Positions 19,975 through 22,409 of a stretch of 64,000 nt of DNA are shown one piece after another. The stretch lies in sequence record NC_062582.1. One strand, 5' to 3'. The notes under the pieces were generated by a model. The model worked only from the letters and a program-made list of their open reading frames with translations. It searched no databases and was not told the DNA's origin. Within the stretch, counting starts at the first letter, position 1; each line of letters begins with the position of its first letter. Position numbers and translations under genes: made by a program.

Positions 19975-19994
19975 GCCTTCCCCTAAGGGAAGGC
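19975..19994. terminator. Bidirectional terminator (family member)
   Basis: GCCTTCCC-CTAA-GGGAAGGC then TTTATG, between convergent genes. Confidence 0.8.
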
Positions 19995-20004
19995 TTTATG
20001 TCGT

Positions 20005-20376
20005 TTAATACCCTTCGTTTAACAACTCAGCTAAAGCTCGTGCTTGGGATATATCTGAGTTAGCAAACTTATCAGAAAGTGTACAGTCAAACCATTTACA
20101 TTCTTCGGCAAGAATACGCATCAGATCTGGGTTCTGTATTGCCCATTGTCTCCATAGTTCTTTATACTCAACCCAAAGGTTCTTGGACTTGTCTACAGGT
20201 GGTTTACCTTTTCCCAATCTCCAGTCAGTGGACCCTGGAGCATGACCTTTAATGTCGCATTGGTAATGAGCTTCAATAGTTCTCCCATCGGGCATAGTAG
20301 CGAACATCGCAGAGAAACGTTTATCTCCCTGCGACGAACACTCGTATGCGTCGTAGCGACGCCACTGATATACTAC
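20005..20376 (-). CDS. NADAR-like domain; frame lacks a canonical start before its conserved-looking N-terminus, candidate -1 frameshift extension of the polymerase exonuclease subunit
   Basis: Open frame VVYQWRRYDAYECSSQGDKRFSA precedes first ATG (20307); RFSA...DGRTIEAHYQ...K and WAIQNPDLMRIL resemble NADAR motifs (SNF...EHYYQA-K; KF-QNPEL). Confidence 0.6.
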   Translation of the reverse strand, partial: VVYQWRRYDAYECSSQGDKRFSAMFATMPDGRTIEAHYQCDIKGHAPGSTDWRLGKGKPPVDKSKNLWVEYKELWRQWAIQNPDLMRILAEECKWFDCTLSDKFANSDISQARALAELLNEGY

Positions 20377-22409
20377 TTTGGGGCTGGTAGCTCTTGGATA
20401 GTCCCCTGACGTTGTTTCAAATAGCTTTCCAACAATACGTCTAGCTTTGGTGCCTTAAAGATCTTCTGTGCAATCTCTAAGGCGTTTGTTCGACAACCCG
20501 TAAGGTTGACCCCAACCTCTCGTCGATGATGTTCAGAGATCCCCCAGATAGCTGAGAATTCCATTACAACAGTTTCACGAGCGATGTTAAGAATCTGACT
20601 TACGTTTGGATATGTCGATACAATATCCAAGTCGGCTACGTGTGTCCAGATCAAAGACCGATAGTCCGGGAATTCTTTAACACACTTAATACCGTTAGGA
20701 CCGGCCATGTAAGACGGGAGTGTTACAATCCAACCATCATGCCCTACTACGTATTGATCGAGTTCATGAATCATCTGATCGGAACTTGTACCAATCACAG
20801 AAGGTTCAGGACGTTTCATGTACCAGAAGTGCATATCGTCACAAAGACGTTTAGGGTTAGAGTTAAAGTTCTTGTAATCACTGTTCTTCGAGTAGAGAGT
20901 AATCGAACGAGCCAAGTCGTTAGTACGTTCATCGAGTTGTTCTAGTCGAATGCTGTCGATGATGTTGTAAAGGCCATAACGAATCTTGTGGTTCTTCTGC
21001 ATCTCGATGTGCCATTCGATCCCTGTGAGATGGTCAGTCTCTGGGAATTTAAGCTTACCGAAGTTCAGTACCATTTTAACTTTAAACGTGCTATGTACAG
21101 TCTCACCAAATACCAATGCTGGAACTTCTTTCCAAACAGGTTCACGGTCAATGTGTTCCAGTTCAGGGTCACCTTCGTTCTCACCTGGAATCATGGTCTT
21201 GGTGATGATATCATCAGCTGGGTTAGATACAGACCAATAAGGGTGGGAACCGCTACGTTCTTCCATCTTCTTGTTGCAAGACTTAAGGAACTCATTCAGA
21301 TCGTCTTGTGTGATGATCTCTTCTTCATCATCTACCGACAGTTCTTTCTTAAGGATATAATCCAAAGCATAGCTTGGTTCTTTACCTTTGGCCAGACGAG
21401 TAACTCGATAGGTTGACAAAGCATCAATGCACTGGAAACTAGCTGGAGCTGTAACCCAATGCCACTGGTCTTCTGGACCTTTAGACTTGGTAACACCCGA
21501 TGCTGTTGTAGACATCGCGTTGTCTTGTTTATAGTGAAAGTATTTGTAATTGCCTGGAATAGACGGATCACTAAATACGTTCTTAGGATCGATACCATGT
21601 TGTTCCAAGTTCTTCAGCATTCGACTCATGTCGAAGTCCATGTTCCAGAAACTGAAGAAGTCTGGTTGCCATTCATGCAAACGTTTCAAGCATTCAATAA
21701 CGATCTGTGCTGGGGTTTCCAACACCTCGACTTCGATGTTCAGGTTACGTGCTTTCTTCAAAGTAACCAATTCTGGAATACGTTCAAGCTCTGCATGTGT
21801 TTCAGCAATTGGATCTTTAATGTCATCTACCCAACGACGAAGATAAGCGAGATACACTTTATCTTTGTGGGATACGGACATACAGATAATTTCCCCATCC
21901 TTGCCTTCTTGGTAAACGTTGGTCTCGATGTCACCACCAGCTACTGTGTTACGGCTGTTCAAGTCTGGATATTGTTCGCGGTATTCGTTCTTCAAGCAGC
22001 AAGTAGAGTTAACGTCTGCACCGTATACGTAAGGCATACGCGATAGCTGACGCAAGCGAGGGCGAGGGGACCATTCTACTTTCTGACCATCTGGTGTTTC
22101 ATAACCACGCAAAGACTTTTGAATAGAGTGTTCTAGTTCAATTTGAGTGGTTGAGTATTTCTTAAGGTTCCGCATATACTCATAGTCTTTCTTCTCACTA
22201 TGGTTAGCTTGACCTTTGTGGGTAATGTAGTAATGACGAATGTAGTCTTCTTCCAAACGAAGTCGAGTAACACGGGTCTTGTCTTTTAGATGAACTACTT
22301 CTTTTACAACGTGTAGATCATGACGCTTCTGATTCTGATCAGTCACGTATGTAATATGTTTTGCTTCGATACCGACAATGTCAGCTTCGTTAATCTTTTG
22401 CTTAGCCAT
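20373..22409 (-). CDS. Split family-B DNA polymerase, 3'-5' exonuclease/N-terminal subunit (phiKZ gp82-like), 678 aa
   Basis: ExoI GGDIETNV, ExoII FWNMDFDM, ExoIII YNIIDS, PolB motif A DLDIVSTYP. Confidence 0.9.
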   Translation of the reverse strand: MAKQKINEADIVGIEAKHITYVTDQNQKRHDLHVVKEVVHLKDKTRVTRLRLEEDYIRHYYITHKGQANHSEKKDYEYMRNLKKYSTTQIELEHSIQKSLRGYETPDGQKVEWSPRPRLRQLSRMPYVYGADVNSTCCLKNEYREQYPDLNSRNTVAGGDIETNVYQEGKDGEIICMSVSHKDKVYLAYLRRWVDDIKDPIAETHAELERIPELVTLKKARNLNIEVEVLETPAQIVIECLKRLHEWQPDFFSFWNMDFDMSRMLKNLEQHGIDPKNVFSDPSIPGNYKYFHYKQDNAMSTTASGVTKSKGPEDQWHWVTAPASFQCIDALSTYRVTRLAKGKEPSYALDYILKKELSVDDEEEIITQDDLNEFLKSCNKKMEERSGSHPYWSVSNPADDIITKTMIPGENEGDPELEHIDREPVWKEVPALVFGETVHSTFKVKMVLNFGKLKFPETDHLTGIEWHIEMQKNHKIRYGLYNIIDSIRLEQLDERTNDLARSITLYSKNSDYKNFNSNPKRLCDDMHFWYMKRPEPSVIGTSSDQMIHELDQYVVGHDGWIVTLPSYMAGPNGIKCVKEFPDYRSLIWTHVADLDIVSTYPNVSQILNIARETVVMEFSAIWGISEHHRREVGVNLTGCRTNALEIAQKIFKAPKLDVLLESYLKQRQGTIQELPAPK
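20376..20382 (-). promoter_or_regulatory. Candidate -1 frameshift slippery heptamer C CCA AAG immediately before TAG
   Basis: Exact X XXY YYZ pattern in frame at the last two codons of the polymerase gene. Confidence 0.55.

What the first reader, a model, noticed from the sequence alone, without database searches (positions are those of the whole stretch)
20005..22409. Candidate -1 frameshift fusing a NADAR-like ADP-ribosylhydrolase to the DNA polymerase exonuclease subunit
Seen (minus strand): the polymerase gene ends GCC CCA AAG TAG, giving a perfect X XXY YYZ heptamer C CCA AAG (20382-20376) directly before the stop. The -1 frame reads on as K-VVYQWRRYDAYECSSQGDKRFSA-MFATMPDGRTIEAHYQCDIKG...; it has no ATG/GTG/TTG between its upstream TAA (about 20455) and 20307, yet the YECSSQGDKRFSA segment looks like the conserved family N-terminus. 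Product would be ~801 aa. Known: heptamers ending A AAG are shift-prone in bacteria (dnaX, IS3 family), an adjacent stop can stimulate shifting, and NADAR enzymes remove ADP-ribose from guanine in DNA (DarT1 antitoxin). Inference: a fraction of replicative polymerase would carry a domain that erases replication-blocking DNA ADP-ribosylation at the fork. The NADAR call rests on motif resemblance only.
Basis: partly seen in the sequence, partly recalled or inferred. Interest (0 to 1): 0.86.

Follow-up and report, generated by a model that had tools for sequence, protein, structure and literature searches.

The report
Frameshift adds NADAR domain to polymerase
In the jumbo phage Phabio, as in phiKZ and most of its Pseudomonas relatives, a conserved ribosome-slip site at the very end of a DNA-polymerase subunit gene most likely lets some ribosomes add a small NADAR-type domain, the kind of enzyme that removes ADP-ribose from DNA.

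Summary
The window is Pseudomonas phage Phabio. Its polymerase subunit gene (the homologue of phiKZ gp82, DNAP-N) ends C CCA AAG TAG. The -1 frame then runs 123 codons with no ATG/GTG/TTG before codon 24, although those first 23 codons are part of the conserved family domain.

Comparison supports a programmed -1 frameshift. Twelve of twelve lineages with the -1 layout carry an in-frame slippery heptamer. In seven of them the only window where a shift could work is 10-13 nt long. Three heptamers occur (C CCA AAG, G GGA AAG, A AAA AAG), and these are the three most efficient in E. coli. Eight of these lineages have no usable start codon. Two metagenomic phiKZ-like phages have the polymerase and the domain in one frame.

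The NADAR guess also holds, but only indirectly. Pfam does not match the domain itself. A profile comparison links it to a 120-aa phage family (99.5% probability) that Pfam calls DarT1-associated NADAR and that matches the Geobacter NADAR structure. The catalytic Glu, Lys and Asp are invariant.

Still open are detection of the fusion protein, the shift efficiency and the enzyme activity. Phabio's closest relatives (the Psa21 clade) use a different layout. I found no paper reporting either feature.

The parts
20373..22409 (-). DNAP-N gene (Phabio gp128): the N-terminal subunit of the split B-family replicative DNA polymerase and homologue of phiKZ gp82. 678 codons plus TAG.
   Evidence: ORF listing and translation. 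RefSeq annotation 'DNA polymerase'. PHROG 3011 DNA polymerase, E=3e-239. tblastn covers residues 3-664 in phiKZ gp82. Role of gp82 taken from bioRxiv 10.64898/2026.09.30.755723.
20376..20382 (-). Slippery heptamer C CCA AAG in the polymerase frame (X XXY YYZ), the candidate -1 recoding signal.
   Evidence: Read directly. The same signal, or G GGA AAG or A AAA AAG, is in frame in 12 of 12 lineages with the -1 layout. These are the three most efficient heptamers in E. coli (PMC4066793).
20373..20375 (-). Zero-frame stop codon TAG directly after the heptamer. It ends the unshifted DNAP-N and is the only shared candidate stimulator.
   Evidence: A stop directly follows the heptamer in 9 of 12 lineages, as TAA, TAG or TGA.
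20377..20454 (-). Stretch of the polymerase gene over which the -1 frame is already open. Together with the heptamer this is the shift window, 79 nt here and only 10-13 nt in seven relatives.
20005..20376 (-). -1-frame coding region of the 123-residue mini-NADAR domain plus its stop. Invariant candidate catalytic residues are E35 (20274-20272), K43 (20250-20248), K56 (20211-20209) and D102 (20073-20071).
   Evidence: Translation. PHROG 9995, E=1e-55. 779 and 812 homologues. AF2 model pLDDT 96.7. hhalign to the PF22397-flagged family, 99.5%. Invariant columns. Residue-level alignment of the sister family to PDB 8bat.
20005..20307 (-). Annotated gp127 'hypothetical protein' (100 aa from the internal ATG). 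This gene-caller product lacks the first 23 conserved residues of the domain.
   Evidence: Relatives are called in the same truncated way (P0001-P0004, P0008 at 81% coverage). phiKZ 082.1 is called as only 38 aa.
20299..20362 (-). Two local RNA hairpins downstream of the heptamer: a 6-bp stem starting 13 nt after it, then a 14-bp stem. They are specific to Phabio and not conserved.
   Evidence: strand folding: -37.2 kcal/mol, z=-3.7. No conserved consensus structure across 8 relatives.
19975..19994 (.). GC-rich hairpin between the convergent genes gp126 and gp127. It is terminator-like and marks the end of the polymerase-domain transcription unit.
   Evidence: A similar hairpin follows the domain in Psa21.

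Best explanation
Most ribosomes translating the Phabio DNAP-N mRNA stop at the TAG and make the 678-aa polymerase subunit.

A fraction slip back one base when CCA is in the P site and AAG is in the A site. The tRNAs re-pair on CCC and AAA, the ribosome reads past the stop in the -1 frame and adds 123 residues. This gives an 801-aa DNAP-N with a C-terminal mini-NADAR domain.

Shown here:
- the signal and the missing start codon;
- their conservation across relatives, with heptamers that can replace one another;
- protein-level selection on the codons that have no start;
- the existence of in-frame polymerase-domain fusions;
- homology of the domain to DarT1-associated NADAR enzymes, with the catalytic Glu, Lys and Asp kept.

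Inferred:
- The domain removes ADP-ribose from guanine in single-stranded DNA, as DarG1 and AdfN do.
- Tethering it to the polymerase carries it into the phage nucleus and places it at the fork, where such adducts block replication.
- The shift is probably a few percent or less unless an unseen stimulator acts. The best heptamers give about 0.3% alone and up to about 3.7% with a favourable 3' context in E. coli.

My confidence by sub-claim: transframe fusion about 0.8; NADAR superfamily membership about 0.9; ADP-ribosyl-DNA hydrolase acting at the replisome about 0.5.
For: Signal and frames.

No start codon before residue 24 in Phabio. There is none at all before the last 38 residues in phiKZ.

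12 of 12 lineages with the -1 layout have an in-frame heptamer inside the shift window. The window is 10-13 nt in seven of them.

Three heptamer types occur, and they are the top three in E. coli (PMC4066793).

At the position where free-standing homologues have Met, the codon is GTA, ATA, ACT, ACA or GTT in five start-less lineages. The heptamer is also kept in the four lineages that do have ATG or GTG there.

Over the 21 N-terminal codons of eight start-less genomes, pS is 0.78 and pN is 0.24.

None of the 22 polymerase-linked loci surveyed was in frame. P0264 (L096, a contig carrying a PhiKZ major capsid gene) is an in-frame DNAP-N-domain fusion, and P0137 (L097) also has the polymerase C-terminus and the domain in one frame.

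NADAR. NADAR proteins also rank first among non-family Foldseek hits.

Other family members are fused to RNase H, an SF1 helicase, DUF4326 and SLOG domains.

Biological plausibility: DarT2 reaches phiKZ DNA in the nucleus and is countered by the imported macrodomain AdfM (PMC13309987). Phage NADARs (AdfN) counter DarT1 (PMC11825919).
Against: No protein, ribosome-profiling or activity data were available. Two 2026 structural papers on the phiKZ polymerase expressed gp82 alone and do not mention an extension.

No conserved downstream RNA structure or well-placed upstream Shine-Dalgarno sequence was found, so efficiency could be very low.

phiPA3 (TAATG), PS119XW (GTGA), 201phi2-1 and Viktualia (GTG) could also start the domain independently. 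The Psa21/D6 clade, Phabio's closest relatives, has lost the -1 layout altogether. The fusion is therefore not indispensable.

Pfam, NCBIfam and a PDB sequence search give no direct hit for the Phabio-type family. The fold match is not significant on its own: E=2.6, TM 0.43.

The domain lacks the N-terminal third of full-length NADARs.

I did not check whether Pseudomonas hosts carry DarT1.
Confidence: 0.72

Rival explanations
1. There is no fusion. The domain is made as a free protein of about 123 aa, either by termination-reinitiation at the polymerase stop or by initiation at a non-canonical codon. The heptamer is a coincidence of the Pro-Lys C-terminus.
For: Free-standing proteins of about 125 aa are the norm for this family. 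phiPA3 has an overlapping TAATG, PS119XW a GTGA, and 201phi2-1 and Viktualia a GTG at the expected start position. The Psa21 clade appears to use its own GTG or TTG.
Against: In Phabio, phiKZ, L014, L016, L017 and L038 the codon at that position is GTA, ATA, ACT, ACA, GTT and ACA respectively, and there is no NTG nearby.

In Noxifer and L019 the heptamer is A AAA AAG, 36 and 96 nt before the polymerase stop, and there is no start near the domain.

The polymerase tails diverge everywhere except in the heptamer, which changes only to another top-efficiency heptamer.

In-frame fusions exist.
Confidence: 0.12
2. The frameshift is real, but the domain is not a DNA de-ADP-ribosylase. It could act on a small ADP-ribose-derived molecule or another N-glycoside, as YbiA-type NADARs do. 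It could instead serve a structural or DNA-binding role in the replisome, or act as an import tag.
For: NADARs have several activities, and phage versions were predicted to target soluble ADP-ribose derivatives (PMC9503650). Family members are fused to DUF4326, SLOG (cpYpsA) and DUF488 domains, which are typical of such networks. The domain is a shortened NADAR.
Against: The nearest recognised relatives are the DarT1-associated (BC4488-type) NADARs, and the subtype-defining Asp in the last strand is present (PMC11125620). All NADARs tested so far hydrolyse ADP-ribosyl-guanine. Fusions to a polymerase, RNase H and a helicase point to a DNA substrate.
Confidence: 0.25
3. Only the annotated 100-aa product from the ATG at 20307 is made. 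The 23 upstream codons are an untranslated remnant, or the layout is a sequencing error.
For: This is the current RefSeq annotation. Gene callers give the same truncated product in relatives.
Against: The 23 codons hold nearly invariant family residues (E12, S14, G17, D18, R20, S22, A23) and evolve under purifying selection. In phiKZ the first ATG would leave only 38 aa. The same layout recurs in dozens of independently sequenced genomes.
Confidence: 0.03

Closest known systems
E. coli dnaX tau/gamma programmed -1 frameshift
   Same: A -1 slip on a V_VV.A_AA.G heptamer inside a replicative-polymerase subunit gene, giving two isoforms from one mRNA. A AAA AAG itself is used in Noxifer and L019.
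   Different: In dnaX the shift truncates the protein and is driven by an upstream Shine-Dalgarno sequence and a downstream stem-loop. Here the shift bypasses an adjacent stop and adds an enzymatic domain, and no conserved stimulator was found.
Transframe fusion proteins of IS3/IS911 (OrfAB), T7 capsid 10A/10B and phage tail chaperones G/GT
   Same: A short overlap, a heptamer near the end of the upstream ORF, and a minor longer product that carries an extra domain.
   Different: Those fuse parts of a single function (transposase, capsid, chaperone). Here a likely counter-defence or repair enzyme is joined to a polymerase. These comparisons are from my own knowledge and PMC4066793.
DarG1 / DarT1-associated NADAR (BC4488 family; PDB 8bat, Pfam PF22397)
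   Same: Homologous through the sister family. It shares the E...K pair, a further conserved Lys and the Asp in the last strand.
   Different: About 123 aa instead of about 210-250, lacking the N-terminal part. There is no DarT1 gene next to it. It is not matched directly by the Pfam model.
AdfN (T4 gp30.3 and other phage NADARs that neutralise DarTG1)
   Same: A phage-borne orphan member of the NADAR superfamily, with the same expected role of removing ADP-ribose from guanine in phage DNA.
   Different: The gp30.3 group has His where this domain has Asp. AdfN proteins are free-standing. None had been reported in chimalliviruses.
AdfM (phiKZ gp104, nuclear macrodomain that neutralises DarTG2)
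   Same: A chimallivirus enzyme that must be inside the phage nucleus to strip ADP-ribose from phage DNA.
   Different: It has a macrodomain fold, is specific for thymidine adducts, is a separate protein imported on its own, and is expressed late.

Membership tests
Programmed -1 ribosomal frameshift site (bacterial X XXY YYZ type) | Slippery heptamer in the zero frame that lets both tRNAs re-pair in the -1 frame | tested here: met
   C CCA AAG at 20382-20376 in the polymerase frame. It is one of the three most efficient motifs in E. coli.
Programmed -1 ribosomal frameshift site (bacterial X XXY YYZ type) | Downstream ORF in the -1 frame, open across the site, with conserved coding sequence and no initiation codon of its own | tested here: met
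Programmed -1 ribosomal frameshift site (bacterial X XXY YYZ type) | Site conserved in relatives beyond what the protein sequence requires | tested here: met
   12 of 12 lineages with the -1 layout have it. Three interchangeable heptamers occur, and the polymerase tails are otherwise divergent.
Programmed -1 ribosomal frameshift site (bacterial X XXY YYZ type) | Stimulatory element: an upstream Shine-Dalgarno-like sequence or a downstream structure at 5-9 nt | tested here: inconclusive
   The hairpins are specific to Phabio and start 13 nt downstream. The consensus fold is -5.7 kcal/mol with almost no covariation. Only the adjacent stop codon is shared.
Programmed -1 ribosomal frameshift site (bacterial X XXY YYZ type) | Transframe protein observed | not testable with these tools
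   No proteomic or ribosome-profiling data could be reached. No paper found mentions it.
NADAR superfamily | Significant match to a NADAR model or to a solved NADAR | tested here: met
   Direct Pfam, NCBIfam and PDB sequence searches are negative. The link is a two-step chain. Step 1: hhalign to the sister family, 99.5% probability, E=1e-22. Step 2: the sister family matches PF22397 at E=5.7e-10 and 39.4 bits, above the 27-bit cut-off, and PDB 8bat at E=9.7e-5. A merged profile still ranks 8bat first, E=0.013.
NADAR superfamily | NADAR alpha+beta fold | tested here: inconclusive
   The model is confident, pLDDT 96.7. NADARs are the best non-family hits in PDB and BFVD but are not significant: E=2.6 with TM 0.43, and E=0.22 with TM 0.53.
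NADAR superfamily | Conserved catalytic Glu and Lys (E88 and K95 of E. coli C7 NADAR; E36 and K43 of AdfN-T4) | tested here: met
   E35 and K43 are invariant in both families. They align with the corresponding Glu and Lys of 8bat through the sister family. The residue roles come from PMC11543638 and PMC11825919.
DarT1-associated (BC4488-type) NADAR | Aspartate as the charged catalytic residue in the last strand, plus a subtype-conserved Lys | tested here: met
   D102 is invariant, sits at the end of the last strand (99-101) and aligns with the Asp of the TDIEF segment of 8bat. K56 is invariant. The criterion comes from PMC11125620 and PMC11543638.
DarT1-associated (BC4488-type) NADAR | Full-length domain of about 210 model positions | tested here: not met
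   Relatives match model positions 48-109 and 128-201 of 212. The alignment to 8bat starts at about residue 75-90 of 254. This is a shortened version.
DarTG1 toxin-antitoxin system (antitoxin DarG1) | Encoded next to a DarT1 toxin gene | tested here: not met
   The neighbours are the polymerase and virion structural genes. It is an orphan, as phage AdfN proteins are.
AdfN (anti-DarT factor NADAR) | Removes ADP-ribose from guanine in DNA and rescues the phage from DarTG1 | not testable with these tools
   Inferred from homology only.
Chimallivirus DNAP-N (phiKZ gp82 family) | Homology over the full length to gp82, and conserved position between virion genes | tested here: met
   PHROG 3011, E=3e-239. 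tblastn covers residues 3-664 in phiKZ. Same neighbourhood.

The most novel reading that the evidence does not exclude
Pseudomonas chimalliviruses, including the model phage phiKZ, make two isoforms of their replicative polymerase. The minor transframe isoform carries its own DNA de-ADP-ribosylase. It uses the polymerase as its vehicle into the phage nucleus and clears DarT1-type guanine adducts from the template directly at the fork. On this reading it is the guanine-adduct counterpart of the thymidine-specific AdfM, and counter-defence is built into the replisome by recoding.
Probability: 0.4. Interest if true: 0.88.

Novelty: new variant of a known kind. Interest (0 to 1): 0.8.

Why it matters
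phiKZ-like phages are leading models for the phage nucleus and are used as therapeutic phages. Their split polymerase was described structurally only in 2026, apparently without this extension.

A conserved recoding event on that polymerase would correct the annotation of dozens of genomes. The domain is currently missing or cut into fragments of 38-100 aa.

It would also add a polymerase isoform to the replisome model. And it would name a likely second anti-DarT activity in these phages, one that reaches the nucleus by being part of an imported protein.

More generally, it would be a case in which frameshifting sets the dose of an accessory enzyme on a replicative polymerase. It also defines a large, previously unnamed 'mini-NADAR' family: about 800 cluster representatives, many of them inside giant virion proteins.

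Tried and rejected
Direct Pfam, NCBIfam and PDB sequence searches of the domain and of 110 family members found no NADAR hit.

Foldseek against PDB and BFVD ranked NADARs first among non-family hits, but none was significant.

A search with the DUF4326 part of a fusion protein, meant to reach DUF4326-NADAR proteins, returned only 2 hits.

A blastn of the locus against E. coli genomes found nothing. I had hoped a tool would show me an accession from which to fetch YbiA as a comparator. None did, so I fetched no YbiA. The comparator came instead from remote phage homologues.

A conserved stimulatory RNA structure was looked for and not found.

The sigma-70 promoter scan gave nothing above the shuffled background, and these phages use their own RNA polymerases in any case.

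In phiKZ and six other lineages the -1 frame is closed 10-13 nt before the polymerase stop.

Transcriptional slippage is unlikely for C CCA AAG, because its homopolymer runs are only 3-4 nt. It cannot be excluded for the A7 run in Noxifer and L019.

Literature searches for a frameshift or a NADAR on gp82 found nothing. The Rhodanese-phosphatase superfamily paper was not held.

I stopped, put it into no tool call, and no evidence here rests on it.
- The script printed the sequence around the ORF boundary of a split polymerase gene in metagenomic locus L097. I do not repeat it here.

I built no sequence joined across the frameshift, and I do not repeat the junction-spanning peptide quoted in the finding.
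Full report
WHAT THE WINDOW IS. The window matches Pseudomonas phage Phabio (NC_062582.1) at 100% identity, with window position = record position - 62000. Phabio is a 309-kb phiKZ-like jumbo phage of P. fluorescens SBW25. On the minus strand the record annotates gp128 'DNA polymerase' (window 22409..20373) and gp127 'hypothetical protein' (20307..20005).

gp128 matches PHROG 3011 'DNA polymerase' (E=3e-239) and aligns with phiKZ gp82 over residues 3-664. According to two 2026 preprints, gp82 is DNAP-N, one half of a split B-family polymerase. It holds the N-terminal domain, the exonuclease and the catalytic palm. gp50 (DNAP-C) supplies the fingers and thumb, and Rhc is a third subunit.

CHECK OF THE OBSERVATION. 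The polymerase ORF ends GCC CCA AAG TAG. The heptamer C CCA AAG lies at 20382-20376 and the stop at 20375-20373. The -1 frame is open from 20454 to the stop at 20007-20005, and its first ATG/GTG/TTG is the ATG at 20307. From 20376 it encodes 123 residues, so a shifted product would have 678 + 123 = 801 residues.

The 23 residues before the ATG belong to the conserved protein. PHROG 9995 (124 positions, unknown function) covers residues 3-123. In an alignment of free-standing homologues the initiator Met lies 0-2 residues before the position of Y3. All parts of the observation are confirmed.

IS IT A PROGRAMMED FRAMESHIFT? I compared the junction in GenBank phages and in 80 IMG/VR loci.

Twelve distinct lineages have a DNAP-N gene followed by the domain in the -1 frame. 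All twelve carry an in-frame X XXY YYZ heptamer inside the window where a shift would be productive:
- C CCA AAG: Phabio, phiKZ, phiPA3, 201phi2-1, Viktualia, PS119XW and the uncultured loci L014, L016 and L038.
- G GGA AAG: L017.
- A AAA AAG: Noxifer and L019.

In nine of the twelve a stop (TAA, TAG or TGA) follows the heptamer directly. In seven of the twelve the productive window is only 10-13 nt long, because the -1 frame has a stop just upstream. Elsewhere in these twelve polymerase ORFs there are only 16 in-frame heptamers of any kind in about 7,500 codons.

The three heptamers found are the ones a systematic study reports as the most efficient -1 motifs in E. coli. That study measured up to 54% with a pseudoknot, about 0.3% alone, and up to about 3.7% with a favourable 3' context (PMC4066793).

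The polymerase C-terminal tails differ completely between lineages except for the heptamer.

Eight lineages have no usable start codon near the domain: Phabio, phiKZ, L014, L016, L017, L038, Noxifer and L019. At the position of the homologues' Met, the first six of these have GTA, ATA, ACT, ACA, GTT and ACA. In phiKZ the first ATG would leave only 38 of the 123 residues.

The 21 N-terminal codons of these eight genomes show pS of about 0.78 against pN of about 0.24 (rough values, because the segment is short). They are therefore translated in that frame.

Two metagenomic phiKZ-like contigs have the polymerase and the domain in one frame:
- P0264 (698 aa; L096:4001-6097, beside a PhiKZ major capsid gene) aligns with Phabio DNAP-N over residues 38-654 and carries the domain at 562-678.
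- P0137 (L097) joins the polymerase C-terminus and the domain in a single ORF. In that contig the polymerase gene is called as two ORFs, with one frame change.

WHAT ARGUES FOR CAUTION. No conserved RNA structure follows the site. The consensus fold of eight relatives is -5.7 kcal/mol with almost no covariation. Phabio has its own strong hairpins, but they start 13 nt downstream. Upstream Shine-Dalgarno-like sequences are inconsistent. The adjacent stop is the only shared candidate stimulator, so the fusion may be a minor species.

Four lineages could also start the domain independently: phiPA3 (TAATG), PS119XW (GTGA), and 201phi2-1 and Viktualia (GTG).

Phabio's nearest relatives have a different layout. 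These are Psa21, D6 and seven uncultured loci, with 67-81% identity in the domain. In them the domain is in the +1 frame, the polymerase overlaps it by about 10 codons, and GTG or TTG codons are present. The fusion can evidently be given up.

No proteomic or ribosome-profiling data were within reach. No paper in the library mentions a frameshift on gp82.

WHAT THE DOMAIN IS. Direct searches were negative: Pfam, NCBIfam and PDB sequences, and Pfam on all 110 aligned members. AlphaFold2 gives a confident model with pLDDT 96.7. In Foldseek the best non-family hits are NADAR proteins, but none is significant (PDB 8bau E=2.6, TM 0.43; a Marseillevirus NADAR E=0.22, TM 0.53).

The link came from remote phage homologues found by tblastn. 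All five that I scanned have Pfam PF22397 'DarT1-associated NADAR antitoxin' as their top hit:
- Rhizobium phage RHph_TM3_3_6: E=5.7e-10, 39.4 bits, above the 27-bit cut-off.
- Bacillus phage HSE3: 27.1 bits.
- Phage 16-3 p043: 25 bits.

That sister family has 1,252 proteins of about 120 aa, and Pfam's precomputed hits flag most of those listed as PF22397.

A profile-profile comparison of the two families gives 99.5% probability, E=1e-22, over 118 columns. The sister profile finds the solved Geobacter lovleyi NADAR (8bat) at E=9.7e-5. A merged profile still ranks it first, at E=0.013.

Across both families E35, K43, K56 and D102 (Phabio numbering) are invariant. Through the alignments, E35 and K43 correspond to the Glu/Lys pair that is essential in E. 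coli C7 NADAR (E88, K95) and in AdfN-T4 (E36, K43). D102 corresponds to the Asp in the last strand that marks the DarT1-associated (BC4488) subtype. YbiA-type NADARs have Glu there and T4 gp30.3-type NADARs have His.

The domain is a shortened NADAR. It begins at about model position 48 of 212, or about residue 75-90 of the 254-aa Geobacter protein.

CONTEXT OF THE FAMILY. A full profile search finds 812 cluster representatives. Many are stand-alone proteins of about 125 aa, often near the early end of N4-like genomes. Others are modules of proteins of 2,000-6,000 aa related to virion proteins and to the N4-type virion RNA polymerase. Still others are fused to DUF4326, cpYpsA/SLOG, DUF488-N3a, RNase HI (confirmed against PDB) and an SF1 helicase with a SprT-like domain.

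These partners are the ones described for NAD/ADP-ribose conflict systems and virion-packaged counter-defence enzymes (PMC9503650, PMC7824862). They also include further replication proteins.

HOW IT MOST LIKELY WORKS. Most ribosomes terminate at the TAG. A minority slip on C CCA AAG and add the mini-NADAR to DNAP-N.

By homology, the domain should hydrolyse ADP-ribose from guanine in single-stranded DNA, which is the product of DarT1. Recent work gives this biological sense. DarT2 does reach phiKZ DNA inside the phage nucleus, and the phage counters it with an imported macrodomain, AdfM, which must itself be in the nucleus (PMC13309987). T4-like and other phages counter DarT1 with orphan NADARs, called AdfN (PMC11825919).

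A NADAR riding on the polymerase would enter the nucleus with it. It would sit where single-stranded template, DarT's substrate, is exposed. These last steps are inference.

That the PRF-bearing genomes surveyed all keep the stop-plus-heptamer rather than a simple in-frame fusion suggests that a low, fixed proportion of the long isoform is selected. This too is inference.

NOVELTY. Programmed -1 frameshifting, NADAR antitoxins and phage anti-DarT factors are all known. What is new is their combination: a counter-defence or repair enzyme dosed onto a replicative polymerase by recoding. Also new are its presence in phiKZ itself and the recognition of the PHROG 9995 family as a mini-NADAR. None of this appears in the papers I could search.

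Noticed in passing
L002:2970-5334; also L007-L013, L015 and L089 (Psa21/D6 clade): [quoted passage not shown] All nine loci keep the string GAAAAGAAG just upstream. The codon at the expected start position varies (GTG, TTG, CTG, ACG, CGG). Independent initiation is the simplest reading. A -2 slip of tRNA-Lys from AAG to AAA would also reach the domain frame and cannot be excluded.
   Followed up: partly
L027:1100-3504 (phiPA3): The phiPA3 DNAP-N gene matches the Phabio protein in two pieces, separated by about 0.35 kb and in different frames. This looks like an intron or a small insertion.
   Followed up: no
L097:2550-4711 (metagenomic phiKZ-like contig, GCA_009771185.1): Here the polymerase C-terminus and the domain are in one frame and the string CCCAAAG is still present. 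The polymerase gene itself is called as two ORFs, with one frame change. This could be an assembly error or a second recoding or insertion event.
   Followed up: partly
L037, L040-L042, L045, L049, L064, L066, L076, L079; also P0155-P0260: The same domain is a C-terminal or internal module of proteins of 1,300-6,100 aa. These are related to giant virion proteins (PHROG 16227) and to the N4-type virion RNA polymerase (PHROG 2206). This suggests it is delivered with the injected DNA in those phages.
   Followed up: partly
P0152, P0153, P0231 (RNase HI fusions); P0200 (SF1 helicase plus SprT-like); P0125, P0136, P0233 (DUF4326); P0233, P0259, L076 (cpYpsA SLOG); P0130 (three matched stretches plus DUF488-N3a): The domain is fused repeatedly to replication enzymes and to domains of NAD/ADP-ribose conflict systems. 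The RNase H fusions are notable because the third subunit of the chimallivirus polymerase is an RNase H-clamp protein.
   Followed up: partly
window 20299-20342 (minus strand): There is an unusually stable 14-bp hairpin inside the domain coding region. A 90-nt fold gives -37 kcal/mol, z=-3.7. It is absent from relatives, and its role is unknown.
   Followed up: partly
L003:2756-2872 (phiKZ), L087:2523-2872 (Viktualia), L004 (HUST_1): Public annotations treat this region inconsistently. phiKZ has a 38-aa 'PHIKZ082.1', Viktualia has three tiny ORFs across the domain, and several records have no gene there at all.
   Followed up: yes
window 19975-19994: A GC-rich hairpin with T-rich flanks lies between the convergent genes gp126 and gp127. 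It is probably a bidirectional terminator, and Psa21 has a similar one.
   Followed up: no
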